DNA of 64,000 nucleotides from Phallusia mammillata (lineage: Eukaryota): NCBI GenBank assembly GCA_965637545.1, contig OZ281496.1, positions 26,722,001-26,786,000 on the forward strand. Reading direction: 5' to 3'. Below are positions 1 to 22,300 of the stretch, piece after piece (positions within the stretch are counted from its first letter, which is position 1; each line of letters starts with the position of its first letter). The notes under the pieces were generated by a model. The model searched no databases. It was not told the DNA's origin and saw nothing but the letters and a program-made list of their open reading frames with translations. Position numbers and translations under genes: made by a program.

Positions 1-3000
1 GAAACTCAACACACGATACTAAATCTAGTCCGCTTTTAGTCTTTCGCCCAGGCTAATAGCCAATAGTAGTGACATGCCATACACAGAGTGCAACATGCCA
101 AATCAGCATGCAAAACTGTTATCCTTATTATACCAAAGATGAACGACTTACTCCAGAGTTGCAACTAATTACGAAGGGAAGAACGTAAAAACCAAGAAAA
201 CTTAACTTCATTCGGTTTGGCATCAATTTCAATCTTGGCTCTACACGACTCTGGCTGCCGTCTAAAAACAAAACAAAAGTGGTACAAGAAACTTAACACA
301 GCATTTAATTTAACTATCACTATAAGCATTATATTGCATGCAAAGATGGGGTATGTGCCTGTAACACCTTCACATGTTATTAAATTAATCTAGACGATTA
401 TTATTTCAATTTACAGAAAACATTTACATGCCTATTTGCTTGTTGTAGTTACTTTCACGTTTCGTGCCTTTTAACTGTTAGATTGGATGCTCAAAAGTAC
501 CAACAAATCCTAAAAACAAACCATTATCAATAACAACACTTTGTAAGGTTATTTTGCAAAACAAACCTTGTTGATAAGTTTGCTTATACATTGACACTAA
601 ATTATATACTTACAACAACAGAATTGCCTGGCTTGAACATCCACCTTCAACGTGAGCAGCAAAAAATGACAGCAGTTGTTTACCTACATCTAACATGTCT
701 GCACATAAACCGGATTCATCCAATGGCTTCACACGTTTCGATGCTTTGTAGAAACTTGAACAAACGTCTGCAACAAAACTTACAGCAGCATTGATGTTCA
801 AACCCGATTAAGACAAAACTACATTTAATTTAATATTGTTATCGTCACCAAGTTTTATTACGCTTAAGGATAGTCAAAGCACAAGTGACATGCCAAAAAT
901 AAAGTGCAACATACCAAGCATGCAAAGTTGAAATCCTTTGAAAGTTGACAACTAGTATAATTACTTTAATAATAGCCAACTTAACTTCAATCGGTTTGTC
1001 TTCAATATCTATCTTGGCTCTGCGCGACGCTTGTCAACAGAATATAACCCATTTCAGCATCATTTCAGCGGGAACTAAACGAATAAAAAACACGCGTTTT
1101 GTTTGAAAAGATACTAAAAAGAGTTATGGCTACTGACCCTGTATTGCACTAACCTGCTGCGAAGGATTTAAATGTTAATGGATTCTGCAAGACAAAACAG
1201 GTCGAAGGTTCTAAAGGGGAAAAATAACAATAAGTATCCTAAGCATGCGGTATAAAGCGCTATGCATAGTACTAAACCTAGTTTACTACTAATCTTTTAT
1301 TCGTGCCGATGCTGACAATCTGGAAGTGAGGACACACGTGACATGCATAACATGAAGTGCAACATGCCAAACCTTCATGCACTTAGATATACTAAAACTT
1401 AACAACTATAGTTCTTTCATTAACTGTGAGTCATAGAAAAGGGAAGCCATTTGAGCTATGAAAAACTTAAAAATCAATTGAACTTAACTTGAATCTGTTC
1501 GAAGTCAATCTTGGTTCTCCTCTGAGTAGTCGATTCATGTCTTGTTGACTACCTGTAAAAAGAAAAGCAGAAGCACGGCCCGAAAACTGAATCCAAAAGC
1601 TCCTTGTTCATGTGCTAAAACATGTAAATATGCGAAGACAGTATAAGTGCACGCTACACTGTCTTCCCGTTTTCGAACATAGTAATCACATTATCAGAAC
1701 TTGCGTTTTTATCACGAAAATTCGCCGAGCAATGCACTTCTACCAATACCGCCAAACGAATAGTCACGCAAAAACACATGACATGCAAAAAACGAAGTGC
1801 AACATACTCAAGCACATGCTAGCTATTCGGATGAACACGGTAGAAGAGCTAACTTTAATTCATTGTTTGTGCCACACTATTTGCACGAGGGTTTACTTAC
1901 ACTGCTGCCTTCCTTATCTGTGCCAAAACGTATAGCTGCGGTTTGTGACGGAAATCTGAAACAAAATCAGCAATTGTTCAAACAAATATAAACAAGCCAT
2001 TTTAATAGCCAGAGAAGCTCAAAATGGTTCACTTACACATTTATCGTAGGTTTTTATTGAATTATATTTAACTCATAATTATTCTTGTTATCAATGTTTT
2101 CTAAAAATTACTAGTCTTAACTTACATGCAGTGTCAGCCAATATCTATTATGTGTATCTGTTTGCTCAGTCTGAAAAAAGTTTTATATTGTAGACATATT
2201 AGTATATTAGAATGGTTGCTCTTTCGTATATAAAGTTGAAACTAGTCTAAAAATTAGTTACCTCCAATTCAAAGACTTTGTTCCTAATAGTCGTAGATAC
2301 TGGCCGTCGCGTTCCAAGGTAAACTGTATGAAAGAAAGAAACAAACAGCAGAGACAGAAACGAATAAAAACTTGTAATGGTACATTAACACGTGCCAATA
2401 TATTATATGCGAAGACAGTATAAGTGCACGTTACCCTGTCTTGTCCTTAACCTAACTACATTACCAAAACTTAAATTTAAACCGTAAGAAACGTACGTTA
2501 ATTTGTTTTGTAAATTTGCTAAATGCGCACTTTTACCGATGCCGACAAACGAACAGTTAGCCCAAAACACATGACATGCAAAAAAATAAAGTACAACATG
2601 CTCAAGCACGGGCTACCTATTCGTATCAACATGGTAAAAGTGTTAGTTTTAAACTTGCTATCCATGTCAATATTTGCACGGGCCGACTTGTAACTGTACA
2701 GGGTATACATGTCCGTTGTTTTTACCACATATTTTAATAAACTCTTCAACGCTTTTGTGTAAAAAAGTTCACTTACATTGTTGCCTTCCGTATCTGTGTC
2801 AAAATGTAGGAGCGGTTGGTGACCGAAATCTGAAACAAAATTAACAATAGTTTAATGATAAAAAATAAATTAAAACGAACCATTCAACATACAGAAAAGC
2901 TGAAACTCTTGTAAGGAACAAGTTACCTTAAATTCGAAGGAGTTGTTCCTTGTATCTTACAAATCAGTTCCTTCTCGGCACACAAAAGACCGTCGCTCTT

Positions 3001-3600
3001 TTGATTCGTACTGTATGAAAATAAACACAGCAGAGACAGAAACTCGTAGAAAAATTAAAGCTACTTTTTCAGGCGCTAAAATATTTCAACATGCAAAGAC
3101 AGAATTAGTGCATGTTACACTGTCTTCCCATAATCGATAATAAGTTAAAAAGGGTTTGTATACATTTACACCAACCCCACATAACAAAGTTATCGCTGCC
3201 GCTATGACTTAAACGTCACCAGAAACAACGACTTACTCATTTTTGTAAGTCGTAATGAAAATTTGCCACTTAACAATCATTCGAATTTCCAAAACGTAAA
3301 TTTGTGCTATTTGTTTGAAAAAATTCGCCAGTTAGTGCACTTCTACCAATGTCGACAAACAAATAGTTACCCAACAAAAATAACATGCATAAATGAAGTG
3401 CAACATGCTCAAGCACCGGGCTAGCTATTCGCATCAACATGGTAGAAGTGTAAACTTTTATTCGCTATTTGCATTGGCCTCCAAAGGTTTTGTAACTGAA
3501 CAAAACACTTTTAAAAAATAAGTAAGAACAATAGCATTACCTGTACGCTCTCCGTTCAACACAACATCCTCCGGCAAGAGTCACCAGAAAAGAATGAGGC
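1..3600 (-). ncRNA. 5' part of a multi-exon, apparently non-coding (or long 5'UTR) transcription unit made of duplicated exon-intron modules; continues off the left edge
   Basis: Candidate minus-strand exons with AG/GT borders: about 3600-3541 (CAG|GTAATG), 3010-2927, 2829-2777, 2323-2262, 2170-2126, 1955-1901, 1552-1489, 1074-986, 261-207. Paralogous exons differ by non-triplet lengths (53 vs 55 nt; 84 vs 62 nt), and joining exons 1-3 by hand gives stops. Confidence 0.55.
69..3450 (-). repeat. Six degenerate copies of an intronic core (GCATG...TTGCACTT...GCATGTC) at 69-111, 885-923, 1338-1380, 1777-1820, 2570-2612 and 3382-3418, each within an imperfect hairpin
   Basis: Direct alignment of the six cores. 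The flanking inverted repeats are cacttctacc/ggtagaag (1735-1846), cacttttacc/ggtaaaagtg (2528-2642) and cacttctacca/tggtagaagtg (3338-3450). Confidence 0.85.
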
Positions 3601-3649
3601 AACGCACGCAAGCAAGAAGTGTGACATCCCCTTTTTCTCTTTTTCCCCC

Positions 3650-3815
3650 TCGACCAATCAGAGCTCTTGTCTAAAAAAACGTCACAGGGGCGGTCTTAAA
3701 CCAACCAATAGCAAGCGTTATTGCATCAATTAGTCATTTGCGTTTGGGAGTAGGTTAATTAAATGCTGGAGGCCGAGAGTTAGAACGCCCAATGGTCAAA
3801 GGGGTATCACGTGAC
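3650..3815. promoter_or_regulatory. Housekeeping-type promoter: three CCAAT boxes, a GC box and a TCACGTGA E-box
   Basis: ccaatca about 3654, ggggcgg about 3687, ccaatag about 3705, ccaatgg about 3790, tcacgtgac about 3806. It lies between the CEP192 3' end and the first exon of the left-hand unit, which begins with an Inr-like CTCATTCTTTTC on the minus strand. Confidence 0.6.
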
Positions 3816-4336
3816 ACAGCTTTTGTAACTTGGCAAATGACCACAGCATAAACGCACGACAAAATATGCACACCAACAGACGGTGTAGCTAAAGCCCAGT
3901 TAGTGATCTATCATTTGTGCCCGACACAACTAAAAACATTACAAACGGTGTATTATTTATAAATAGAAACATACTTCCAAAAATAATACCTGTGCGGACT
4001 TTTAAAGGTGCTGACGGTTTGGGCTGTTTAAGTTGGGTGATAGTTAGTTAATTAAACAAAAAATTAATCTCGTTTCAGATATCCATTTTGGGACTTTTTT
4101 TGTCACCATATCATACAGTATCCCATGCAGAGTTTAGGACCACAACCCACAGCAAGAACCAAGATGCGGAACAAACAAATGTCAGCAAGATTACAATTAG
4201 TTTTGATATCCTTTCCTTCAAGAGAGTACGGCTTAAAGATCATCTCATTTTCACACACCAGCATAATGCAGCAGTTAAATTTATTGACAAATAACAATAT
4301 ACGAAAAAACAAAATGGTAGTCGAGATAATGATAAA

Positions 4337-7300
4337 CTAGCAAGCGGTTGCCTTCAAAGTAACATTGATGGTGTCTCCATTTTCGGTTTGTACGACAAGT
4401 GTTCCAGTAAAAGAACCAATGCTCGTTGGTTTGAATGTGATTGGAAGATTGGCACAGTGCATCGATCTGCAAAGCAAGAACGTTCAATCAGTCAGAAGCA
4501 CCCAGGTCAGTTGTTACAAAGGCTAATTTTAACCTTACAAAATTTTCATATACAGGTTTAAACGCACGTTGTTCAGATCTTTTACACCAATGTTTTAAAC
4601 ATTTTTTTACACTACGTTCTATGATAAAAAGGAGGTTGAACTATGTTTTAAAATAAAAATGCTTTTTTACACTATGTTTGCAATGAAAAGGAGTTTTTTG
4701 CCTTTAAAAAGTTGTGTCAGACTTTATAATGTTCCCTACTTCTAGACAGAAGTGTTTGCACCGACGAGAATATTTCGTTTATTATCTATGATCAGGGCCT
4801 GATCATTTGTGGACGTGCAATCGCTTATGAATTAGATCTATTCGAACTTACCGTACTGTATGCTTTAAGTGCGCAGTATGGAATGGTGGGCGAATGTTAA
4901 CAAACTTCACCTGCGACATAAAAAGACAAATGGTTACAGCATTTTCGACCAGAAGTTCTATCTTTCCAACTATAGCACCAGTTAGATTACAACTAATAGG
5001 CCTTAAAATTGTGGTAATTTTGCATACCGTCCTTGTTCCTTTTTGGACTCCCGGCAAACATGCATTACTTACAGTGTGAGCAGTTTTGCCTTTGTTTTTG
5101 ATGGGGATTTTCAGCAGTGATGACTGGCCCACCGCGGTTTTCTCGAATGTGTACGAGTTCTCGCTAATGTAGATATCGCTTCTGTGAAGAAAGTAGTATG
5201 TTCTGACATGGGCTTGAATGATTTTTGATAGTCATGGCTTTAGTGTTCAACATTTCGTTAACCCCCTATTGTTTGGTAATTTGAAACAAGTATACACGAA
5301 AAACGTGCATTTTACCTACCGCATCCTCAGCACAAAAAATATAGTCCAGTTTATCAAAATAAAAGCAGTATAAGACAGCACTGTACAAAATTCCTAGACT
5401 TGTTAATTATGTATCTGCCCTTCTCTCCGAATTTTCTTAAAGCGTCATAGTTGGGCATTGTTAAGTCACAGAAAAACGACTGTTAACGATGTTTGGGCAT
5501 GTTACGAGCGACAAAAAAATGCTTTAAAATGTGTAGTAAACGTATTCTGTAATGACATGCACAACCATGGCATTCTGCGGTGTCTAGACTTTTTAGTGTA
5601 CAACTTCAGTTAATAGTTGCAAACAGACCTAACCATACAAAACTTTAACAATGCCTGAAATTTATCAAATTAAGACGGTTTGTATCATTTGCCATTACGG
5701 TGTGTCAATTGTTATAGCCCCCACCCAGTTAACCGAATAATCTCTATACACAAGAACAAAGTAGGATAAATCCGTGATTAATTAAGCTTTAAATATCTAA
5801 GAAACATAAATGAGGTTTTTCATTCACTTGTTTGGTTTTCTGGAAGCTGACAATGGTGCAGCGGCACGTCGAGTCGAAGCTGACTTGAGGCACTGAAACA
5901 AAAGGTCAGATATCCGTTACATGATAATACTAACAGACCGAAGCCCACTGCGGTTATGTGTATTGATTCAGAAATATACCAGCTTACCTGGCCTTGTAAG
6001 GAGATCTTCGCTCGCTGAAGGGAAAGCGCAGGGCCATCAGTTACTTCATGATACTGTAAGATAAGATAAGTAAAGTTGTTACAATATTGTTTTTTTTTGT
6101 GTTTTTGTTTGACCAGGTTATAGCATTTCATGTTGCTTAGGTAATAATTTACCAGTCGCTAAACATTATACGTATTTAACGTTTATTTTTTTTTATTATA
6201 CGTTAAGAATACGTTTATATGCTAGAAACAGACAATAAAAGCGGCAAAATTTATGGTTTTTGTTTTGCAGTTTAGTTTTTTTTTTTTTTTAAAACACACA
6301 AAAAAAACATTCATTATAGTCCATGAGCTTTATTTGACATAAAGTTCATTATATTCTTCATTCACCAATCAACAAGTCGTTGAATATATTTTTAAGTTTG
6401 TAATACAAGTAACAGTTATTCAATTAGGGGCATACATTTAATCGTATTAGAGTGCGTGCTGAGCTTGGCAACTCCTACGCAAAAACAAACTACCCAATAC
6501 TAAAAATATACACGTAAAGTTGTCAAATTGTTTTAGACACAACCCCTGTAGGAATTTCTACCTCAATTTCCCAATGCTGAGTGTACATGCCCGGGTTCAT
6601 GGGGTTAAAGGTCACGGGAACCTGGATTCGAGCTCCGGGTTCGAGTCGACCTGATGAATGCGCGAATACAAAAGCGGCGTATGTCGACCTAAACATGTCA
6701 CCTGTAATGTTAAAACATGTGTTAGCTGTTTTCAAAGAAGTTAGTCCAGATGTAAATGCGTTTGTTACAAAAAAAGTGATAATTTAAACCGCAAATAAAT
6801 ATAACGTTATAATGAGTCAACTTCTAATTCTTCTAGCTTCTGTATTTAAGTCGTTTCTCTGCCCTAATAAAGTAGACCTCTTCACACACAACTGATTACA
6901 AATGAAGTTTTACCGGCAATATCCTCGTTTATGAATTTTAAGTTGAAATAGTCAATTCTGTGCTAATAATTTACATACGTACATACACACATATATACAG
7001 GGTAGCAATACCGTCCTTATTTTCGGCTCCATGTCAGCCGTACATATATATGCTTGTAAACGATCTGGGTCGCGCTGGTGTCCATTTTACGAAAAATTTA
7101 AAATTATTTCGTTTAAAAACATGTGATTTTGTTAAGGGGGGTTTATTGCAAACAAGGGGTTACTGCACAGGGGTATATTTCACAGTGAAAATAAATAGAA
7201 ACAAGTGTCATACCAGAGGAGTCTGCGTTCTTCACATAAGCTGGAGCAAATGACGTCAAAACCCATTTTGTGTCGCGTTTGGACATGTTCCGAAACTCCA

Positions 7301-10300
7301 AGTGCGATTCTAAACAATAAACACATGTATTGTAAAAGGTACACGGAACAAATATTAAAGCTGTATCAGTTTTTGTGTAGTTTTTGCCAACCGAAGCTTA
7401 TGTCACTTACCAAACTGTAATTAAAGGTGTAAGCTGTTGCAGCCAGGCATAATATCAACATTGTAGAGCTCTTCTGGCAATTTTTATGCCAAAAAGGATT
7501 GTTTATCGTGCACTGTACTCTTTTACCCTAAAGAAGGCGAATTGTATGGGACTTTGTAACGTTGGTATGAAAATACAATTGCCAGAAAAGCTCTATAAAG
7601 TAGTAGCTAAAGGTGTTCCATTGTTAACGTTTACCACAAACAAATACAAAAATCTACTCACTTCCACTTGCTCCTGCAGCAACGTCATCAAAATCGACCA
7701 CGTGACTTGTAACGCGCAAGAGCGGCGGTTGTGGTGCAGGGAGTGAAGCGCACTCGTCGGAAGAGATCCCGCTCGTCCGTGATGAGGGAAGGGAATCGGA
7801 TTCTGGCTCTTCCTCGCTCTTGATCTGAAGATGGATGACCCTAGTGTTGTCTGAACCACCGGGACCCGAACCCGTAGCAACCACCATGGCTTGACCACAC
7901 CAGGGCAAGAGCTCTTTGTGTCCGGCTAGGGAAGGGTTTGCGCTAATAAGGAGGACTGATGCAGATCTAAGGATAAAGAATACAGAAGTTATTATGATCT
8001 GTCATTAGAACGTGGTATAGGATTTTAACTGGTGCATTTGGTTACATAATTAAAACACACACGTTTCCTATTGATTTTCTTTATACTTTAGTAAAGAAAG
8101 CCAACTCAATTTTCGCTGAGCTGCATCATTAAAGGACTCATGCTTACAATTATAGTAAAGAGCTTTGACTCAAATTCAACCAGTAATTGATCCAACAAGC
8201 GGTACCATGTTCTTTATGGATATAAATTCAACTTAATGTATAAAACACAAAAGAGTCGTACATTAAGTGTTTAAAACGGTACCAGCAAATATCTGCAATG
8301 CTACTTGGTAAAGCTCTAAAAAGTAGGTATCCATGAGCCCAGATATAAAGCATGTACTCGGTACCGAGTATAGGCAAATACTCGGTGTAATACTCGGTCA
8401 GAATGACTGTTATCAGCCACTTACTCTGGTTCTACTCGGCCTCTGTTCGGAGTTATGGTCAAATAGTGTCCTGGCCATACCACGTCATATACCAACGAGG
8501 CCATCGACCGGTTCACAATCTTAACACGACTTGCTTCTGGAACACCAAGTCTTCCCGAACCCTTCGATGGGGGCGTGGCTAGCGTTAAGTGGGCGGGGCT
8601 GACGTCCCAGTTGAGCGCAAATGACGAATCTTTTGTGACTTCGGCGGATTGTGCAGGTTTTATTGGCATCTGGAGGATAAAGAAAAAAATGACACTATCA
8701 CTTAATTTTATATAATGCTTTACGGTTATTTTATTGAGTTATTAACTGAAATAAAACAGTTTGTTTCTTCTGTAGGCCTACCGTTATTAGCTGAGTTAGT
8801 AAACTGTTTTTACGATATTTTAGGACAACATACAAAAAGTACAGGAACAGCTATGACCATTTCTTTTAATTTCATGCCATTTTGTAACTTTCTTTCATTT
8901 TATACAGCGATAACAGTTCTGTGCGACATAATGCGAATAAAATGCGTTTTATCAAACAAACGGAACATCAAAACGGTAGTTATATAGTTGTTGTCAAATG
9001 GATTACAAGTTTACACATGTATCTCATAGCAACGAGTAACCATTAAGCCGTTCTTGTTACATCAATTCTAGTGTTCTTGGTCTTTACCTGACTTCTTGAT
9101 GTTAACTTCGACAGCAGATACTGAACGTCGCGTTCAGCCTCACTGGGTCGTTGCTCAGCAACGGGTTTCGCGGCTTTGGATTGGTTAGAACCGGTCAAAG
9201 AGAGTAAATCAGGTCGCGGTTTAGGAGCAATGATCTTTATGTAAAATAATACAAACACACGACGTTTAACGGTTAAAATGTACAAGAATATGGGATGGAA
9301 GTTAAATCTGTTGTCTTACCTCGATAACTGATTGCCGAATGTTGGAGTAAAAAATTTGGACGTCGAAAGAATGAGGCTCGTGATCTTTTAAGTCTTCTTC
9401 AGCGTTTGAATCTGCGAGATAATAAAAAGTAGTTACTGCGCATTTTCACAGTTGATAGTGCAGCTGAATTTAGAACATAAACAAGTAGGATCATAGTTAA
9501 AGTCGGACCGGAATTTTTGGTCGGAGACGGACTTAACTTTAATAAACTGGCTTGATACGAGCCGGACTTACAAACCAAATTAGGCCAAATTTGTTTCTTA
9601 TTTTCATCTGGTAAAATTTTAATCTAACATTCGGGGATTTGCGTAAAAAACAATGTTAGGTGCTCTAAAGACAGAGAAAAAAGTGTGAAAGTTTTAAGCA
9701 TAATCAACTAGGATTTGTACCTTCTCCTTCAAAGATGCCATCAAATGGAACAGATCTCAGATGTGCAAAGGATTGAGGGACGTATCTGTTCACCAATGCA
9801 GCAGCCGACGGTTGTTTGCGCAATGTTATCTTTAGTGCTTGTCTCGCTAGTTCGTCACCATTCCTACGCCACAAGGAAATTAAATAAACAATACTATGTA
9901 CATGTAGTAGTGGTTTTCAAAGAATGTGTAGCTCTAGTGTCGGCATAATAATAGATTCAAACGCTGAAGAAGACTTAAAAGAGAATCATGTGTCGAATTT
10001 CGTCAGGTACAAATAAGTGATAAAAAAATTACCTAAATTTCAGTAAACAAAAAAAAGAGAAATAAAAGTGTATTCGAAACGTTTCGGCAGTTCATGAAAA
10101 GAACATGTATTTTTAACGGATTTGCTTCATCCTTAACATTTTGCATCATTTCGATGTGATGGGTTTCAGGCACAACAAACGCACCAAATGCTCAAGAAGT
10201 AGGACTTTGTCGATTCTGCGTCCGATGAGCGAACAGCGATCTTACGACTTTGGCGCTCTTGCAAAACGAACTGCTTCGGATGACACGTGATTTCTGACGT

Positions 10301-13300
10301 CACCAGCTTACAAGTCGAGTCTCTGTTGAAACCAAAAAGTATTAAGAGGTTTTATATGCATGCTTATCGAAATATATATATATGCTTAGCTTTCCTTAAA
10401 GTCCTGTTATGTTTAAATTTAACTACATAGAAGGTTTCCATCATATTGATAGACAAAAGTTATGGTTATTATCAATAAAGTAGTGCAATAATGGCATTCA
10501 CAAGGTTGCAGATTCGTGGTCTACGTGAAACTTGGACCATTTTTTTCACTTACTCGTAGACGACGATCTTCACAAATGCCATTCTGCTGCCTGTGTTTCG
10601 CAAGATGAAATTATCTCCATCTAGAAATCGACAATTGAGTATTTTTTACACACAAGTCTTTTATGAATGAGTCCATAATCAGTAATCATGCACTTTTACT
10701 GGACTATAGCAAATCTTATGTCTAAAACCACGAAGCAAAACACGTCAATAAAAACAACGAGCAAATATATTGTAAAGAATTAAACATAAATCAATGTTGG
10801 TTTGACATGATTTAAGTCTTCTATACACCTTTTTGCCATAACAACGTTTGTATCAATCGCTCGGCAGTTAAATAGGAATAGAAAAGAAATTGGTAGTTGT
10901 TGTTCTGAATTACTAGTTGATGGATGCAAAAAATACGGAATAATGAATCAATTATTTCTTACTTGTATTTCTGGTTTTTGTGTTCAGGGCAAAAACTTCA
11001 GGACGGTGGTTGTTGTGTAGGGGAATCCGCTCGGTATCAGAGAGCTCGAGACCTTCCACTGATATTTTGCTTTTACCTCCGTAACCACTCAGCGGAATCG
11101 TGTACTTGGTTGCTGGTAAATCGTCTGCAAATGCGACAAAATGGTTTTTTTACCAGGATAGCTTAATATAAAAGTATTTTGTAGATACCATGAAAGGTTG
11201 GCTACAGACAGTGCTACACTGTTTCGATGATCAGGAAGCTCAGTGGTTAAATTAAACTCAGATAGCTGAATTATTAACTGCACCGAATACTTAACAATGC
11301 AAGAAATAGATCAAAGTTAAGAATTTGGACTGAAAACTTCAGTTTGGAGTTGGTGTGATAAACATTTCGCGGCATACTTTAAAATGTTTCGGGGCCAACA
11401 GTTTGAGAGTTCGTGTTTTTTTTTCACGCCAGAAATACTTATGTAAGCCATTCACGGTTTTAAAACCTTACACAAGAAAGAAATGAGTCAACGAAGCATC
11501 ACATTTTTGACAGCTCTCATTTTTACCAGAAGAAACTGAGAAGTTTTTATGAAACTATAGGAGACCGTTCTTACCGACTGGGGTCTTCACTTCGAGTTTA
11601 GCATGGACCATCTTCTGCCGGGATGGAGCAAAAAGAATATTCACAGCTTTGTCTTGTCCCGGTGTAATCATCATATCACACCGGGCAGAGAGCTCGTCAC
11701 ATCCTGTCTCTGACGTAACAATCTGAAAAATAACATGACTCATCAACATCACAGCAATAAATACCCACCAAAAAAGCTGACTCAGCAAATTTCTTTACCT
11801 GGAAACTGTTAGTGTTGTCTCCTTTTATCGACGCCCGAAATGAGAACGGGTTTTCACATGGACCACTTCTGAGCATGAGTTTTTGACGCATGGACTCACC
11901 GATGGCCACGCCACCCCATCGCAAGCGTGTTTTATTTGTCAGTAAGCTGGTAGGAGCCGCGGAGGCAATGGAAGTGCGAACTGGTTTGTCGGCTAACGAG
12001 CCCGAGACTTTGACTTCAAACTGCGGGCCAGACGGAAGGATCTGTATTTAAGCAAAGGATTTAGCGAAAAGGAGACATACATTTCTTTTGAAAGATTCGA
12101 ATAGGGATTGGTTTAATTTATGGGTCCAAAACGACACATGAACTTAGAAATGCGTCTCGCACGCAAAACAAGAGCATCAGGTTTATGAATTTGTCATAGT
12201 AACGTGACATACGTTTTGCATGCCTCAGGAAAGACCAACACAACAAGCACAATGGACAATAATATACAATTGGTGCGCTGAACAAGGCGGTTTAGGGCTG
12301 TTTGACATTAGGCCAAGTCCAGCAACTGGCTTCTTAACTATGATTAAATTTATTCAAACAAATCCTGACACAAAGTGTAAATCAGGTCCGAGTCAAGCCC
12401 GGTTTTATGAAGAAACCTAAGCACGAACCAGTCCGGAAAAGCCCAACTCTGTGTTACATGATGCATTATATTACAGTGCTATGTCAAATCAATCTTTTTC
12501 CATCCAGTTCTAACAAGAAATTTGACAGTTTTTTCAACTTTACGGCACTTACGTTCATCAGCACAAGGGTTGAAACAGCTTCTCCACCAGGTTTAAGTTG
12601 TGTGTCATGAGGAGGTGTGAACTCGACAGTGAGCTCAATGTCGCCACCTGGTGGAAGTACTGCACTCGTGGGAGTCACTTTGAAATGGTCGCTGTGAGAT
12701 TGGACCAGAAATTCGACTTGTACTGTTATATTGCCGGCGTTCTTCACCGGAAAGGATCTGTTCTGTTTTGAGCCTGTTAATAGAAAAGTCGTCAATTGGG
12801 GTTACTACAGGTCAAAAAAGTTGCCAGTCACATAAGGTCAAAATTATTTAATCATTAAAAAAGTATCAAAACTGGGTGTATAGTGTCCGACTACCCAAAG
12901 CATATATTAATTAATTGTACCAAGCCGTTCTGACAACTGGGCTAAAGTTGCTTAAAACCTATGGTATTAAAACAATTGTTTAAGCCTTATAAGGTCACTT
13001 TCTATCGTTCTTTCATCACCAACCGCATGAATTATGTTTTAAATCTTTGCATCTTTTCTTTATCCTATATCCATTTAATGAAGCATTTCCAATTATCTTC
13101 CCAAAATTAATATACCATGCTAACGGTGCAGTAATCCAAATTTCACTTTGTAAACACATATTCCAAATACCTTTGGACGTTGAAAAACACAAGGCTTGCT
13201 GGCTTCTTGGTGCATGTAGTTTTCCCACACCCAGTAGAGCGCTCACTACAATCGAATCAAGCGCAGTTTGGACTTGTGATGACCCACTACCACTCTCCTG

Positions 13301-16300
13301 TAGTTTAAATGGAGCATCAAGAATCACTTCAATGCGGGCTTCAACGGGTTGAGGCTTTTCAGCTGCAAAATTAAAGCGACATGAGTAATTTACCTTAAAA
13401 TTTAATCACAATACAACGTAATTCCTCTAAACTTCTAAAGTATATGAAAGCTATTATTGTTTTGTGTAACATTTCGCTTGGAACCCTCTGTTACAGCTGA
13501 GGTAATTTTAGCATGATATACTGTTTTATCTGATTTATCTCGGTCGGCAAATACAAAGTTTGGACATAAATACGGTCCGCATTCTTGATGGGGTATTGTC
13601 AAAATGGTATGCTATATATGGCATGTCACAAACCATATGGACCAGCGCTTGGGGTTAAAAATGTAATACATATTCAAGTCCCGCTGCATTGCAGGTTTTT
13701 AAAACACATACCTGGTGGAAAATGACGGCTTGCTGAATTCAAATGAATCCAAACAGTTGTTGGTTGTGATCCGATGGGTAGAACGCTTTGCAGTATAGAC
13801 ATACCACCCGATGATGCATCTAAAACAGGAAAATTCAAACGTAAAAACACGTTGTCACACCAAGCTTGCTACGCAGTAAGCAAAATAGGCCCTGAATCGG
13901 GGTTTGTGCCGCCCTACAGCACAGGAGGAAAGGATAACCTGCAGCCAAGCGACCTTTAATGCAGCTAAATGTTAACATATTTGACTGTCATCAATGGCTA
14001 AGTTTTGGGATGACTTATAACACAGAATATAGTCAATGCAGCCTCTAGCCTCTATGTGTGGCGGTGGATTGTTAAATGGCAATAAACGAAAAAACCTCTT
14101 CATCGGTTTGTATTTGCAAGGTCATCATTACATCCAAATTGTAACACATCGTCTTTTGAACCACGAACGCAAATAGAGAAACGCAATGGGTTGTTTTTTT
14201 AGATACCGTATTTATTTGATTTTAAATTTTTGTACACATTTGTGCAGCTTAGCATTAAGTACATACGGTAACACCACGATTTGACATTATGTATCACACC
14301 GCTAGTTCGTAAAATATAAAAACCACTATACTGTAAATTATAATGTACCTTGGGGTGTTGATGGAACTGAAGTAAGAGAGAGCGAGAAAGATGCTCGATC
14401 CGGAGCACTGGAATAAACTACCAAACGAATCGGGGTTTCAACTTTAGCTTGGTTCAAAATCCTAAAAAAGGAAAATGTTCAAATGAGGAAAAATTCGGCC
14501 TATCATTGGGCCATTGCCTACAATCTACAATAGTGCATCTCAGCCCTTGGATCGCAACCTAAAAGTGGGTGGTCATTTCATTTAGTTGGGAGCTCGATTA
14601 CAGTCGGTCACAAATCCTAGGAAACTGAGTACCGTATATCAGGGAATTTACTTCATTTCTACACGTGGTTTGTAAACAGACACTCAAGTTCTGGGAATAT
14701 GACTTGTGAAGTTTTGAAAATACCCCATGTTAAATCATTTTTGCATGGTTCAGCATCTGCTATTGGGGAGGAATGAAAATGTTTTGAATTGTCAAGGGCG
14801 GAATTCGAAAAAGGTTGGGAACCACTGCCGTATATTATTGCATATATATAATCGGCTGACGTTTCTGATTTACAAATTCTTGCAGCAAGTTTGCAGCACT
14901 TTCAGTTTGAAAAAAATGACCAATGAGTAAAGTATTTGTTTGGGCCGTCTTAAAAAGCCCTACTCAACATAACCACTAGGGATGTGCCAAAACTGCAAGT
15001 GTTCTGTTTGGTCGAGCACTGAGCATCTCACGTTAATGCTCGGTGCTCGGCCGAGCACGCTCGGTGCATTATGACGTCACAAAAAATCCCCTTTCTACGT
15101 TATAGCTCTACAAGGTCTCTTACGTCACCAGCGGTGTATTAAGCTGTACAGGTCTCAGAAGTACACGTTTTTTTACAATCTAATACATTTGAAAAAATCA
15201 TTTGTTTTTGTTCATAGACACCCTTCTGAACACTAGTTACCTATGTTAGCAGGGCATGAATATGCAAATGTACTGCTCGGGTCAGTTTGTGCAGCTGCTC
15301 GGCCGAGCACCGAGCATCAAAAACAGCGATGCTCGGTACCGAGTACTCGGGTTCTGGCTCGGCTCGGCGCATCCCTAATAACCACCTATATTTGCCATGT
15401 TTTTCCACAAGCCTTGTATTACTGACTGGCCGCCACGACAATTTTGCAATTTCTTTAGTTCTAGAGAACGTATGGACTGGAATTTCGACTCACCTTAACG
15501 GTTGACACTTGGTGGCGCCATACACAACCTCGCCAAACGCGATAGAGCGTGACCGCTGATCACGTGGCAGCTCGGGTGTGCCAAACAACACCACGGATGG
15601 CGCTTCAACACTGCATCGGACATTTAGAGTAGTAACGTGACACCGTGGATCTTGTGTACTGCCTCCTTCCACGGCGATCAGATGTGACGTAACCTACACA
15701 TATTCACGAACAGTTTCTTTACGGTAGGCCTAGTTTAGTCATTATTATTATTATTATTATGTGATTAGGCAACAGTTTGTATTACTGGCCGCAATCTATG
15801 TTATTGACCGAAATGACGATAAAACAACTGTAAAACACAAAACAAGTTTTAATCAAATGGTTTTACTGTGTTGGAGGTTTCATTTTATTATAGTCCTCGC
15901 GACCCCCAGGAAAATGCCAAACAACCACCACAGTGGTCGCGACCTACGGGTTGAAAACCACTGGTCTTAATCATTGACAGTGAGTATTTATCAAATGCCT
16001 TACCGCTTACACTACAGGTATCTATTCCGAAAATATGGTCCATAAACAGTTTTAACAAATATGTTTAATTTTTAAACGAACAGTTTTTTATCAAATAACC
16101 TACCTCCAGGATGACGTCACAACCTCCAGACACGTGACCAACGACCGTGACGTCAGTATGTTCGACGCTGTGCGGCCCAATCACGTGTTTCCGCTTGACT
16201 GTTACGTAACTTTCGGGATTGTGTGGGGCGGTTTGTCTGTTCACAGAGACTGATATTGGACGAACTTCAACCTGAACGTGAACATATGCAGACATTAATG

Positions 16301-19300
16301 AAAGTCATCATATACTCACAGGTAGGGATGGGCCGAGCCGAGCCAGAACCCGAGTCGGTACCGAGCATCGCAGGTTTTAATGCTCGGTGCTCGGCTCGAC
16401 ACAAACTGCTAACATATGTAACTAGTGTTCTAAAGGGTGTCCATGAACAAAAACGAATGATTTTTCAAATGTATTAGTTGGTGGAAAAACGCGTACTTTA
16501 TGGGCATGTACAGCTTAATAAAACACCGCCGGTGACGTAAGAGGCCTTGTAGAGCTAAAACGTAAAAAGGGGATTTTTTGTGACGTCATAATGCACCGAG
16601 CATTAAAGTGAGATGCTCGGTGCTCGACCAAACAGAGCTTTTGCACATCCCTACGTTTAGTTGCATGATCCTTTACAAAGGAAATGAAAGCTATACACAT
16701 AAATGTTTTGGAGTGACAGGCTAAATTAGAAGTTTTTAAATCGGGTTCGATCCAACACTTGGGAACGATGGATTCAAAGCTGTATTTGGCCGCAAATTTG
16801 GGATCAAAATTAAATTTAGCTAAAATTATAACTTCTAAAAGGAGATTACGATACCGAGTGTTAAGTCCGGTTATAAGCAAGCTCGTTTAATGCAATCTTA
16901 AGCCCGAACTAAAACAGCCCGCCTAGAGTTACACAAGCGATTATTACCGCTGATTCTATTACATAATACAACAAATTCAAATAGCTAAGTGGTCCACAGT
17001 TTGGAAAGGACTGCTGAAAATCGCCTCTAATGCACATCAAAATGGTATGCTTTATGCCTCTTATCGATCCTTTCCGACGAAAAAGGTTGGGTGCTATTGC
17101 AAGTGACACATTGCATACCTGAATCCATCTTGGACAAGTGTTCTTAATGGGCAAGACAGCTTTTCCTGGCACCCCAACACAAAGGATTTTCTCTACGACT
17201 AGTTCGCCGGGAATCGAAATTGGGGAAGCACCTGGAAAGAGGCAATGAGTTAAAATAGGATAAAGTTTAGTTAATGTCGGCAATAATAAACATAAGTTTA
17301 AACAACAAAACGTTGCAAAAATTAACGAAACACTTTCTCTTAATAATTAGCAGAAAGGTTCTCGACATAAGAGAAATTCCTTCCTAGTGAAGGATTTAAA
17401 AAAATGTTGTGTAAAAAAAGGTTACATGCCAATGAATTAGCGAGTTTAGTTGCAGAAATCTGTCTCCAACGTTTTTTAATCGTTAAAATTTATGGTTACA
17501 GCGTTAAAGCAAGTTATCCAACCTATTTGCTACGCGAAACAGCATTATGCATGCAATTTTGTGTCCAAAAAACACAGCGGGTATATTAGGTGCCCTATGG
17601 CGTAACAAAGGGTTGGACAACTTGTGTTTCATAGAGACTCTGCTCTCCTCTATCTACACCTCAAACAAAAAATCTTACCGTCAAATATTTCAGGTTGTTG
17701 TTGATACATTCGTCTATCCTGGGGACACGACATTACAGAAGCACCATGGTGTGATGGATAGGGAAGCATGGTTGGGTAGCTATGAGCGGGATGAGATCGG
17801 CCACTAAATACTGTAGAGTCAAAAGAACGACTGTCCACCATGTAACCGGGACCTGTTCGAAGTTTGAAAAATGGGTTTAAATGTGTTGTATATAATTCTA
17901 ACAAATAATTCTTTGAAGGTTTTATAATACATATATTTTTCTACTGGTGCCGCCTGTATCAGTGTGCTCTAACCACTGTTCTGGGACACATGGTGGTATG
18001 CTGTATAGGTGTTTTCAGAGAGCAACAAAAATCCTTTGTCCTAACTTTATATATCTAATGTTTTTGAGTTTCAACTACAATTTGATCTCTTTGTTTATTA
18101 AAACAGTCTTATTGTTTAACTTGCAAATTAATCATTATCAACGTTTTTTATGCTTTTCGCAATGCCGCCAGAGAAAAGCACTTGCATGTGTTATAATCTG
18201 CCTCCTAAATTACAGAAACAAATGTTGTAGAAGTTTGATAACTAGAAAAAAGTAGACGTTTGTCAACTACAACGCACATAAATTGCAAATAAATAAAATT
18301 CACTCTTTCAGTTGCACGTTTTACAAATGTTACATGCAAACGAAGAGGTTCTTATGTGTAAAGCTCACTTATGTTAGTGATTGAGATCAAGGCATTACAA
18401 GTATTTAGGAACAGTCTAAGTATGAAATCAAGTACTTACCATAAGATCCGAGGGTGACGGGCATTGGTGGCATTGACAAGTTGGGATGCATTCGATGATA
18501 GAGATCACCTGGTGCGGACATATAAGATGCGGGAAGTGGAGGGATCACTGACGGTCCGGAGTAATACGGAGGATATAAAGAATGTTCAGGATGACTTGCA
18601 TCCACTGGAGGACGAATCATATACTGGGAGGGCATCATTTGTGGAGGAACAGAAGAACCACTAATGCCAGAAAGACGGTCACTAGAGCTTCGACTTGCTT
18701 GTGATAGATCAGCATCGTATTTTGTGCTTGACGCTTTCGGAATTGCATCAACAGAAGAGCAAGAAGATATTTCATGCTTGGAGCTCGATACGGACTCTAA
18801 ACTTGCACGTTTTTCTGCGTCCTCTTCTTGTATTGTATCCAGCTGTTCTGTAGGAAGGTGACGCAGGTGAAAATCGCTCTCAGTCACCGTTGCCATTTCG
18901 TTAAAACTCGTGGATGGTAGAAGGTGGTGGAAGGCTGATGATAATCGTGAGAGGTTTGTGTCGTCCAATTTTTCCCACTTAGTGAAGTCGTGTTTTTCGG
19001 GTGAAGATTGTGAAAGCGGATCCATAGAGGGTCTTGGTGATTTTTCACCCTCTTTTTCAGCCGTTTTCCTGCATAGAAAAATAAATATGAAAAAAACTGT
19101 GCAGCATGCGAACAGGTATAAGTCAAGGATAAAGCGGGCTTTGGGAATTTACCAAAATCGATCATTACTGATTTTTTTTCTAACACTCTGTGTGTGTGAT
19201 GTAATAACAGTTTTACGACGACGACTACTCCGCATGAGAATGTGTACCAAATGTGAAAGTTGTCAATCCTTTGAATGCGTTTTATAAATAGATTACCGCA

Positions 19301-22300
19301 TTTGCGGCACACAATTTAAGAACTAGAGTAGCCCTATTCGAGGTGTTGTACCGAATCAATCCGGTCTCCAAAGCACTCCCATGTGGCAATACATAGATAA
19401 AACGAACCCTAGCTAAATTAAACCCACGACAGGAGCCTATTTGGACTGGCACATCACCAATTGAGCTACGCAAGTTATATGTTATAGTTTCGTAATAGAG
19501 AATCGCCAGTGCGGCCACTTGTCAAAAAAAACAAGAGCATATTTACAGGCTTAAGCAGAATACGATTGCTGGTTTCAATGACAACTCATGGATGGTCCCA
19601 GCAGGACATGTATGGCCATACATATTACAGGAAAAAATAAATCTATTGAAGTAATGACTTGTGATAATTGTGGTAATGAGTCGGTTTAAGTTTTGCAGGT
19701 TTCCTTTATTCCTTACCACTTGCGCAAAGTCATAATTATTTTCCTATTTGTTTGTTCCACAAGGGTTTGTATCTAATGGCAATGCACTAATATTGCTATA
19801 AAACAACGGACACAAATGCGCTTTAAACACTGTAAATGCGTTGCTAAAGCGAATTTACAGCAAGTATGAAACGGCAGGAAGCAACTAACCAGCTTTTAAA
19901 ATCAGTTTCATCCACTTTCTTGCTTGGTTTGTCCAAATCATTACAGGACGCACTTTTGACTGATGATTGGGTCGTCTTGTTTGTAACCAAATCAGGTAAA
20001 GACGCATCAGTATGTACTTCTAAATAAGAAAGGCCAGAATGCAATTTTATCAGCTCAAGGCAGTTTAGAAGTTTATGGTAACTTGTGTAATACCTTTTCC
20101 ATCCAAGCGTATTCTCAGCTTCTTGTGTAGGTTTTCAATGCTTTCTCTACAGCAAAATTTATCAACAGTTAAAAGTATTGTTGAAATGGTTTTAACAAGC
20201 TTTTATCCTGCAGTATTTGTACTGAAGGCAAAAGTGTTTGTTACATTGTTTTACCTTATGAATTCAAAGACACAATATCAAATTGGGCCAAAAATCACAT
20301 TTATTTGTTAAAAGCTCTTACAAACAGTAACAAATGAAAATAAGACAATCATACCTGCTTAGGGAGCCCCTTGTCAAAGATAAATTTGCTCTGGTTGAAG
20401 ACAAAAAGTGAGAGTTGATTGAATCAGTTGAGAAAATTGTCTCGTTGTTGGGTAGAGAAGGCAACTCATCAGTTTCATACACAGGTGGTTTACCAGCATC
20501 TGGTAATTTCTGGTCATCTTTGGCAGGTGTAGGTGATTTGGCTAAAACACAGTAATACAGTATATTAACACAGTCTGCAAAAAGGAAACCTATCATTTAA
20601 ATAAAAATGAGGAAAGACTTTGTTTGATTAAAAAAAAAATCTTTTGATTTAAAACCTGTCTAAACTTTAGACTCTGAAGGGAAAACATACAGAACAGGCA
20701 CAAAGAAAACAATACATATTCAAACACTTTTGACAAAGAAAAGTTGACAATTGTTGTTATTTGTTGCAGGTGTATGTGACTTAGCTGAAACAAAATAATA
20801 CAGTAGTGTTGTCTACATACTGCCAAATAACATTTTGTATGTTGGAAAACAGTGAACGTTAAACAGCTTAAACTAAACTTTTATTTTTTTTAACTTATTT
20901 TTTTTAATTTGAAAAATAAAATACTTACATAAAACATAGACCATATCGACACAGAAAATATTACTTATCATCACAATCCTATTGGTGCATCACCAATTAT
21001 AAATCCATAATACCAATCCTCACTGGCAGATTTCATTAAGTATATATGTTGCAAGTAACAGGCAGCCAGGCAAATCTCATAATACAAAGTTGTTGAATAA
21101 TATGGTAGAACAAACCTTTTTCTAAAGCTGAAATTGCTGCTTTATCCTCAATGCTTCTCGATGAGGTGTTTGATGTATTGGAAGAATTTGATGAAGCATC
21201 AGAAAGTCGTTTGGCATGTTCAGGAATTTTCACATCATCCCCTTTCAATGTACTGTCAGCAGGCAAAGTGTCAGAAACCACGGTGCTATCTCGAACTGCA
21301 GAGAACGATTTTGAATCATCATGACTTAGAGAGTTCTTGTCGGTGTGATGGAATGGTGTAGTGTCATGAGTTGATACTGAAAGACAAATAAAATATTGAC
21401 CAAACATATATTTCGGAAATGGGCTGTTTTAAATTAGAGCACAAACCTGCAGAAGATGCCCGAGACTCAGCTTTTGAATTTGTTGATGGAACACTAAAAT
21501 ATATTTTAAAGCAAAAAATTTAGTGCTTACATTTCTCGCCAAACTGGCACAAATTGCTTCCTTTTTTTACCAAATCCTGATAAAGCTTCCAAGCAGAGTT
21601 GTGGAGTTATGAGATTCACTATTTTTAAGGCTGCTATGGCGAACTTTGGACAATGCCCAGTATATCACTGCGAAATATGTTTTTGTGTGGGTTTCAGTCT
21701 TAAAATTAAAAGGAACTTACACATGACTAGGAATAGTTGAATAAAATACCCAGTAAAGAAGTTTTTTGTCATCTGATGTAAGACCACACTCTTTTATAAT
21801 AGATGTACCTTTTCCTATCATTACAGTCATTTTTAGATATTGTGGAGGTAAAGTCATAGTTGTAATATTTTTGGTAACTGTTTCAGTCAGGTTAATAAAA
21901 AACATCAATAACTTCTGACATGGCAAAGCAAAGACTTTGGTTTAAGTTGGGAGCGGAGTTATTTTACACAAATTGATTGAAGTAGCCGTTAAAAAAATTA
22001 TAATCAACTCCATATCCATGCTTTAAACGGTCAATTCAACCCTGGTACCACTGTGTTAAAGCTTTTAAAATACAGATCCGACACACACTTACACAAACGT
22101 ATCTTTGTTGACCGCTCGCTGCTTCTGCTCCTCCAGTTTTCTGTTGGATAGAGCAACAATAAACTTGGCAAGCTCTTCATTGTTCATACTGCTCGACATA
22201 TTTGATATTGCATTTGACAAACTGTTCATCATTGACTTGTCAACTGTATCATCTGGTTTGAAAAACAAAAATATTAAACAAGGTAATGCCATTTCTGCTT

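What the first reader, a model, noticed from the sequence alone, without database searches (positions are those of the whole stretch)
20..3600. Non-coding host-like transcript whose duplicated introns each carry a conserved GCAUG-rich hairpin with covarying stems
Seen: six intronic cores, each about 60-150 nt downstream of a predicted 5' splice site on the minus strand. Each has 2-3 GCATG, and several also carry GCTTG and GTATG (e.g. TGCATGCTTGGTATG at about 909-923). The cores sit at the apex of imperfect hairpins whose stalks diverge in sequence but keep pairing. Copy 6 CACTTCTACC/GGTAGAAGTG becomes CACTTTTACC/GGTAAAAGTG in copy 5 (a compensatory change), and older copies use different stalks (AAGGAT/ATCCTT). 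Exons drift in length while splice sites and intron cores are kept, as in snoRNA/miRNA host genes. Known: GCAUG is the RBFOX motif, and GCUUG and GUAUG are reported secondary RBFOX motifs. Inference: this is an intron-encoded structured RNA family, either RBFOX-gated long-loop pre-miRNAs or RBFOX-presenting splicing elements, in a host I do not recognise.
Basis: partly seen in the sequence, partly recalled or inferred. Interest (0 to 1): 0.78.

Follow-up and report, generated by a model that had tools for sequence, protein, structure and literature searches.

The report
Repeated intron motif rich in GCAUG
A sea-squirt-like gene made of repeated tiny exon-intron units keeps the same ~50-base GCAUG-rich motif in six introns. 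It most likely serves as a binding platform for splicing proteins, but only three copies sit in a real hairpin and no RNA evidence was obtained.

Summary
The six cores are real. A composite pattern hits six times, all on the minus strand, against 0 expected. Each core has 2-3 GCATG, and minus-sense GCATG is 6.5-fold enriched. Each lies 53-178 nt downstream of a predicted donor.

The claim of a conserved hairpin with covarying stems holds only in part.
- Copies 4-6 share a long inherited stem (fold z -1.7, -6.5, -5.2).
- Copies 1-3 do not fold better than shuffles.
- Covariation is weak: 5 of 48 pairs changed on both sides, and 36 of 500 shuffles did as well.

A second conserved stem-loop (B) lies 76-82 nt upstream of four predicted acceptors.

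Nothing matched Rfam, and there are no snoRNA boxes. The arms and core are absent from the Ciona miRTRAP microRNA tables. No spliced RNA was seen, so the transcript stays predicted. The longest exon ORF has no protein relatives.

Best reading, at moderate confidence: a cis-acting intronic RNA module with RBFOX-type sites plus an unexplained UUGCACU block, and the stem is an add-on of one subfamily. A small-RNA precursor is the main rival.

Earlier notes of this scan (s1-375403, s1-375404, s1-375444, s1-410980) describe what look like the same motifs in repeated units 1-1.6 Mb away. I could not compare those sequences.

The parts
3381..3428 (-). Core A copy 6 (GCUUG, GCAUGUUGCACUU, UGCAUGU)
2572..2621 (-). 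Core A copy 5
1779..1827 (-). Core A copy 4
1339..1385 (-). Core A copy 3 (no significant stem)
886..935 (-). Core A copy 2 (only a 6+4 bp AAGGAU/AUCCUU stalk, not above shuffles)
70..126 (-). Core A copy 1 (no significant stem)
3329..3471 (-). Extended hairpin around copy 6: outer 8-bp helix, 13-nt bulge on the 5' side, an imperfect main stem of about 30 bp (3337-3450), and an apical region of about 45 nt holding the core
2520..2664 (-). Extended hairpin around copy 5 (main stem 2527-2643)
1726..1869 (-). Extended hairpin around copy 4, decayed by several mismatches (main stem 1734-1856)
3089..3126 (-). Element B copy: short stem-loop (arms AGACAG/CUGUCU, loop with UGCACU), 79 nt upstream of the predicted acceptor
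2405..2442 (-). Element B copy, 82 nt upstream of the predicted acceptor
1628..1665 (-). Element B copy, 76 nt upstream of the predicted acceptor
337..367 (-). B-like relic (loop and 3' part kept, stem lost), 76 nt upstream of the predicted acceptor
3541..3600 (-). Predicted first exon. It begins with a pyrimidine run (CUCAUUCUUUUCU) and its donor is GTAATG.
   Evidence: boundaries inferred
3601..3800 (-). Promoter-like stretch with three CCAAT boxes (3654, 3705, 3789), downstream of the Cep192 poly(A) signal at 4285
   Evidence: inferred
2927..3010 (-). Predicted exon E2 (paralogue of E4)
2777..2829 (-). Predicted exon E3 (paralogue of E6)
2262..2323 (-). Predicted exon E4
2126..2170 (-). Predicted exon E5
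1901..1955 (-). Predicted exon E6
1489..1552 (-). Predicted exon E7 (paralogue of E8 and E9; donor uncertain)
965..1040 (-). Predicted exon E8 (both boundaries uncertain)
614..770 (-). Predicted exon carrying the longest ORF of the locus (63 aa); the ORF has no relatives
152..261 (-). Predicted exon E9 (donor at 152 or 206). The gene runs off the window start.

Best explanation
The locus is a minus-strand gene. It has its own CCAAT-box promoter just downstream of Cep192, and it grew by tandem duplication of small exon-intron units.

Selection has kept two RNA elements in the introns:
1. Core A is a roughly 50-nt single-stranded platform. It lies 50-180 nt downstream of each small exon. It carries two or three RBFOX-type sites (GCAUGU, with GUAUG or GCUUG as variants), a U-rich spacer and an invariant UUGCACU block.
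2. Element B is a short stem-loop at a fixed distance of about 80 nt upstream of the next acceptor.

I infer that both act in cis on the pre-mRNA. Core A would recruit an RBFOX-type protein, and probably a second factor for UUGCACU, to promote use of the weak upstream exon. Element B would shape the acceptor region.

The roughly 30-bp main stem around copies 4-6 is a later addition in one subfamily and holds the site cluster in a loop.

Shown: the motif family, its placement, its selective retention and the stems of copies 4-6. Inferred: transcription, splicing, protein binding and the effect on splicing.
For: - Six cores against 0 expected, and none elsewhere in the window.
- Minus-sense GCATG is at 5.3 per kb here against 0.8 per kb in the rest of the window. 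Fourteen of 19 lie inside cores.
- The cores stay 80-90% alike while the surrounding intron is unalignable.
- The core is kept in copies 1-3, which have no significant stem. So the linear motif is the family constant, not the hairpin.
- Variant sites are GUAUG and GCUUG, which are documented RBFOX secondary motifs.
- The core anchor lies 53-178 nt downstream of predicted donors. B lies 76-82 nt upstream of four predicted acceptors.
- GTAAGT occurs 8 times on the minus strand against 1 on the plus strand.
- In helices 2-4 of the copy 4-6 fold (main stem and apical helices), 14 pair positions show G.U in minus sense and 1 shows A.C.
Against: - No RNA evidence. Three presumed RNA runs gave no junction and no exon contig for this locus.
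- The best-conserved block, AUGUUGCACU, goes beyond any RBFOX motif and is unexplained.
- The two invariant CAUG-containing blocks can pair with each other. Their conservation could therefore be structural rather than protein binding.
- Fold z-scores are similar on both strands, and the sense strand is G+U rich. The G.U excess therefore does not settle the strand.
- It is unclear why a gene would need arrays of such regulated mini-exons.
Confidence: 0.4

Rival explanations
1. The locus is a small-RNA host array, like the SNORD116 or C19MC arrays. In this reading the repeated exons exist only to be spliced. The element A hairpins (about 145 nt in copies 4-6) are precursors of a lineage-specific small or mid-size RNA, such as a long-loop pre-miRNA or a stable intron-derived hairpin RNA.
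For: - The architecture of tandem tiny exon-intron units, each with one conserved intronic element.
- Copies 5 and 6 fold very stably, with z -6.5 and -5.2 and an imperfect main stem of about 30 bp.
- One compensatory pair in the main stem and four in an outer helix.
- An excess of G.U in the main stem.
- Contigs from a presumed RNA run contain paralogous copies of the element.
Against: - Copies 1-3 keep the core but have no significant stem.
- The arms are no better conserved than the loop, and the arm sequences differ between copies at the would-be seed.
- There are no C/D or H/ACA boxes in the sequence.
- No Rfam family matched, even with lax filters on the hairpins alone.
- The arm and core words are absent from the tables of 380 Ciona miR loci (whether the species is the same was not verified).
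- A loop of about 45 nt and a paired base outside the stem are atypical for Drosha substrates.
Confidence: 0.2
2. The array is a protein sponge or scaffold. The nascent or retained-intron RNA of this and the sister arrays concentrates RBFOX-type proteins through many site clusters. It would then act in trans rather than on its own splicing, as proposed for the sno-lncRNAs of the Prader-Willi region (my own knowledge, not checked here).
For: - Many clustered GCAUG sites per transcript.
- Earlier scan notes report what look like the same motifs in arrays of about 20 copies 1-1.6 Mb away.
- Additional non-identical copies are present in a DNA run and in a presumed RNA run.
Against: - There is no expression or localisation evidence.
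- The fixed placement relative to donors and acceptors is more naturally explained by action in cis.
Confidence: 0.12
3. The element works at the DNA level. In this reading the cores are clustered transcription-factor sites in an intronic enhancer module. For example, paired ACATGC-type half-sites about 11 bp apart resemble p53-family decamers.
For: On the plus strand each core reads xRACATGCxx, then 10-12 nt, then CAACATRCxx. The hairpins fold equally well, by z-score, on both strands.
Against: - The CWWG centre of the second half-site is broken (CATA) in copies 2 and 4.
- The conserved AAGTGCAAC between the half-sites is not explained.
- The main stem shows a G.U excess in minus sense.
- The spacing to splice sites is fixed.
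Confidence: 0.1
4. The cores have no function. They are simply the slowest-decaying or gene-converted parts of recent tandem duplicates.
For: All copies derive from one array by duplication, so the six copies are not independent. Covariation is not significant.
Against: Copies 1-3 have diverged from copies 4-6 beyond alignment everywhere except the core, its 3' flank, B and the exon or splice regions. Earlier notes report apparently similar motifs in separate arrays.
Confidence: 0.08

Closest known systems
RBFOX-dependent downstream intronic splicing enhancers ((U)GCAUG clusters, with secondary GCUUG/GUAUG motifs)
   Same: Two or three GCAUG sites plus secondary motifs, within about 200 nt downstream of a small exon. 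The sites are retained while the rest of the intron decays.
   Different: - Binding and regulation are untested.
- An adjacent invariant UUGCACU block is not part of any RBFOX motif.
- The module is amplified with its exon in tandem arrays.
- In three copies the module sits at the apex of a long stem.
Tandem small-RNA host arrays (SNORD116/SNORD115 host genes, C19MC)
   Same: Repeated tiny, poorly conserved exons with well-kept splice signals, and one conserved element per intron.
   Different: The conserved element has no snoRNA boxes and no conserved miRNA-like arm. It matches no Rfam family. Half the copies lack any stable fold.
RBFOX-binding terminal loops of pre-miRNAs and RNA bridges that present distal RBFOX sites (own knowledge, not checked here)
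   Same: GCAUG sites are displayed in an unpaired region closed by a helix.
   Different: The loop is about 45 nt. No small RNA is known. The stem is absent from the older copies.

Membership tests
Canonical pre-/pri-miRNA | Imperfect stem of about 35 bp with single-stranded flanks | tested here: inconclusive
   Copies 5 and 6 have an imperfect main stem of about 30 bp. A further outer helix pairs the flanks. Copies 1-3 have no significant stem.
Canonical pre-/pri-miRNA | A mature arm or seed that is better conserved than the loop among paralogues | tested here: not met
   Invariant columns are 76% in the 5' arm, 71% in the 3' arm and 79% in the core. The arm sequences differ between copies 4-6 at the would-be seed.
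Canonical pre-/pri-miRNA | Match to a described family or to the catalogue of this lineage | tested here: not met
   No Rfam hit at gathering score, and only E>1 noise on the hairpins alone. No occurrence in the miRTRAP Ciona tables (species identity unverified).
Canonical pre-/pri-miRNA | 21-23-nt reads from the arms | not testable with these tools
   The single read-laying run showed contigs only. No small-RNA run was available.
Box C/D snoRNA | RUGAUGA and CUGA boxes next to a terminal stem | tested here: not met
   The nearest strings are UGAUGC, UGAUAC and UCAUCC inside the 5' arm, with no CUGA before the 3' arm. No Rfam match.
Box H/ACA snoRNA | Hairpin, H box, hairpin, then ACA 3 nt from the end | tested here: not met
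   There is a single hairpin without a pocket. An ACA is present only in copy 6. No Rfam match.
RBFOX-type intronic splicing enhancer | (U)GCAUG sites, conserved, within about 300 nt downstream of the regulated exon | tested here: met
   There are 2-3 GCATG per core. One GCAUGU is invariant in all six copies, and a second is GCAUGU in four copies and GUAUGU in two. The cores lie 53-178 nt from predicted donors. The splice sites are predicted only.
RBFOX-type intronic splicing enhancer | RBFOX binding, and RBFOX-dependent inclusion of the exon | not testable with these tools
   This needs CLIP or EMSA, and a knock-down or minigene.
MITE or other dispersed foldback transposon | Terminal inverted repeats with target-site duplication, and copies scattered independently of their flanks | tested here: not met
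   Similarity runs past the stems into shared flanks, exons and B, which indicates segmental duplication. No copy lies in the other 60 kb. Copies 1-3 lack one arm.
Tandem small-RNA host array | Repeated exon-intron units with one conserved intronic element each | tested here: met
   on predicted splice sites.
Tandem small-RNA host array | The intronic element is processed into a stable small RNA | not testable with these tools
   No suitable reads were available.

The most novel reading that the evidence does not exclude
A tunicate-specific class of amplified genes whose introns release, or whose nascent RNA displays, stem-closed loops loaded with RBFOX-type sites plus a UUGCACU site. These would act as a titrating hub for splicing factors. 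This would be an independent invention of the logic proposed for the Prader-Willi sno-lncRNAs.
Probability: 0.1. Interest if true: 0.8.

Novelty: new variant of a known kind. Interest (0 to 1): 0.5.

Why it matters
If the cores are working RBFOX-type platforms, these arrays would be a compact natural system. The same regulatory module has been copied many times together with its exon. That would make it useful for asking how site number, secondary motifs and loop presentation tune splicing in a simple chordate. If instead the hairpins yield stable RNAs, they would be an undescribed small-RNA class. Either way, a real and selectively retained non-coding element family is currently unannotated.

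Tried and rejected
- **Rfam.** I searched the whole window at gathering score, 1-5000 at E up to 10, and the hairpins alone with lax filters. Only noise came back.
- **snoRNA boxes.** I read the sequence for C/D and H/ACA boxes and found none.
- **Pol III transcript.** Rejected, because T-runs of 5-7 lie inside the core.
- **U1A-type loop (AUUGCAC).** The core has GUUGCAC (GUUGUAC in copy 5). This resemblance is from memory only, and neither the U1 nor the PIE model scored.
- **Branch point in B.** Rejected, because an AG lies between B and the acceptor.
- **Coding host.** No ORF exceeds 63 aa. That ORF has no Pfam family and no word-search homologue. Among 1.84 billion representatives its only hit is a spurious 55-aa tandem-repeat protein. 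E3 and E6 share synonymous-looking changes, but then differ by a 1-nt indel.
- **Exact look-ups.** Three ORFs were looked up and none is on record.
- **Metagenome scan for the core pattern.** It returned 120 single chance matches, none like the family.
- **Protein search meant to fix the species.** No hits.
- **RNA runs.** No junctions were seen.
- **Joined spliced model.** It was neither built nor searched.

Full report
**What is there**

Bases 1-3600 read as a minus-strand gene.
- GTAAGT occurs 8 times on the minus strand and once on the plus strand. Pyrimidine-rich acceptors follow the same bias.
- The upstream neighbour on the same strand is Cep192. Pfam domains D3-D8 were found on exon ORFs between 4851 and 12795. 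A further C-terminal exon ORF, which I judged only by eye, ends at 4337. An AATAAA-type signal lies at 4285.
- Three CCAAT boxes (3654, 3705, 3789) precede a pyrimidine-run start near 3600. The locus therefore looks like a separate gene with its own promoter. That is an inference.
- The gene runs off the window start.

**Repeat structure**

A sensitive self-comparison finds similarity only within 1-3500, all in direct orientation. The repeated blocks are:
- small predicted exons with their splice sites;
- core A, six copies;
- element B, a short stem-loop with arms AGACAG/CUGUCU, in three copies plus one relic.

Between these blocks the introns cannot be aligned. Similarity extends beyond the hairpins into shared flanks and exons. 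The copies therefore arose by tandem segmental duplication, not by transposition.

**The cores**

- The pattern ATGTTGYACT-N4-14-GCATGTYA hits six times, all on the minus strand, against 0 in 100 shuffles.
- Each core has 2-3 GCATG. GCTTG is in four copies and GTATG in three.
- Minus-sense GCATG density is 5.3 per kb here against 0.8 per kb in the rest of the window. Fourteen of 19 lie inside the cores.
- The invariant blocks are AUGUUG.ACU and GCAUGU.A. The U-rich spacer between them varies in sequence and length.
- GCUUG and GUAUG are reported RBFOX secondary motifs (10.1101/840272).
- The UUGCACU part is not explained by RBFOX. A related UGCACU sits in the loop of element B.

**Placement**

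The core anchor lies 53-178 nt downstream of a predicted donor in all six units. B ends 76-82 nt upstream of a predicted acceptor in all four cases.

**The hairpin**

- On the minus strand, copies 6, 5 and 4 fold with z -5.2, -6.5 and -1.7. Copies 3, 2 and 1 give +2.1, +0.6 and -1.3.
- A flank-against-flank duplex test gives p 0.004, 0.015 and 0.32 for copies 6, 5 and 4. It gives 0.97, 0.6 and 0.15 for copies 3, 2 and 1.
- In the six-way alignment, the 3' flank of the older copies is homologous to the 3' arm of copies 4-6, but the 5' arm has no counterpart. The long stem is therefore an addition in one subfamily, not the family constant.

**Covariation in copies 4-6**

- On the RNAalifold structure, 92% of cells pair. 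Five of 48 pairs changed on both sides, and 36 of 500 shuffles reach that number.
Four lie in an outer 8-bp helix whose sequence is otherwise poorly conserved.
- In helices 2-4 (main stem and apical helices), 14 pair positions show G.U in minus sense and one shows A.C. The outer helix shows 2 against 4.
- Minus-strand folds are 9-15 kcal/mol more stable, but z-scores are similar on both strands, and the sense strand is G+U rich. RNA-level pairing on the minus strand is suggested, not proven.
- Arms and core are about equally conserved among copies 4-6.

**Known families**

- Rfam gives nothing at gathering score, and only E>1 noise in focused searches.
- There are no C/D or H/ACA boxes.
- The arm and core words do not occur in the tables of 380 predicted Ciona miR loci. 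I could not verify that the window comes from that species.

**Host coding potential**

- No minus-strand ORF exceeds 63 aa.
- That ORF has no Pfam family, no word-search homologue, and only a spurious tandem-repeat hit among 1.84 billion representatives.
- Exons E2-E6 (301 nt) contain no AUG, where 6.6 are expected. This would fit a long 5' leader as well as a non-coding RNA.
- The joined spliced model was not built or searched.

**Expression and other copies**

- No run on record as RNA holds the stretch.
- Of three presumed RNA runs, two gave nothing. The third gave five short contigs that are 90-95% alike. Four cover cores 1 (two contigs), 5 and 6. The fifth covers only 760-792, at the start of the 63-aa-ORF exon. 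All have flanks unlike this locus, so they come from paralogous copies.
- In the DNA run, 107 of 194 laid contigs are only 90-95% alike. Several join non-adjacent copies. More family members therefore exist in the genome.
- Earlier notes of this scan describe repeated mini exon-intron units with a GCAUG cluster and a short stem-loop about 0.99 Mb away. They also describe about 20 copies of a 50-nt GCATG motif about 1.59 Mb away. These look like the same family, but I could not read those sequences, so I treat them as leads.
- A metagenome scan for the core gave only chance hits.

**Verdict**

The motif family is real and selectively retained. The 'conserved covarying hairpin' is true only for the three youngest copies, and only weakly.
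- The best reading is a cis-acting intronic RNA module: RBFOX-type sites plus an unknown UUGCACU reader, with B near the acceptor. Confidence is about 0.4.
- A small-RNA precursor array is the main rival, at about 0.2.
- Neither can be settled without reads or relatives.

Noticed in passing
window 3228-3256: A perfect 9-bp hairpin (ACGACTTAC ... GTAAGTCGT) lies in the first intron. Its minus-sense 3' arm carries GAGTAAGTCGTT, a 12-nt stretch identical to the predicted donor of the copy-1 exon (142-153). It looks like a relic donor site locked in a stem.
   Followed up: partly
window 4337-21400, minus strand: A Cep192 orthologue lies here. Pfam domains D3, D4, D6, D7 and D8 were found on exon ORFs. 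A C-terminal exon ORF (judged by eye) stops at 4337, and an AATAAA-type signal lies at 4285. The repeated-unit gene starts only about 650 nt downstream on the same strand.
   Followed up: partly
window 1901-3010 (predicted exons E2-E6): The five predicted exons total 301 nt and contain no AUG, where about 6.6 are expected. This is as expected for a 5' leader under selection against upstream start codons.
   Followed up: partly
window 2777-2829 and 1901-1955: Paralogous exons E3 and E6 differ over their first 24 nt only by changes that are synonymous in one frame (ISVTNRSY, including TCC against AGC). They then differ by a 1-nt indel. This hints at a coding ancestry.
   Followed up: partly
window 701-840: Many contigs of the DNA run lie on this stretch. 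A contig of the presumed RNA run matches only 760-792, at the start of the 63-aa-ORF exon. This suggests a further short repeated segment.
   Followed up: no
P0001: The only hit in the large protein search is a 777-aa protein made of about fourteen 55-aa tandem repeats. It is probably a translated satellite, and the match is spurious.
   Followed up: yes
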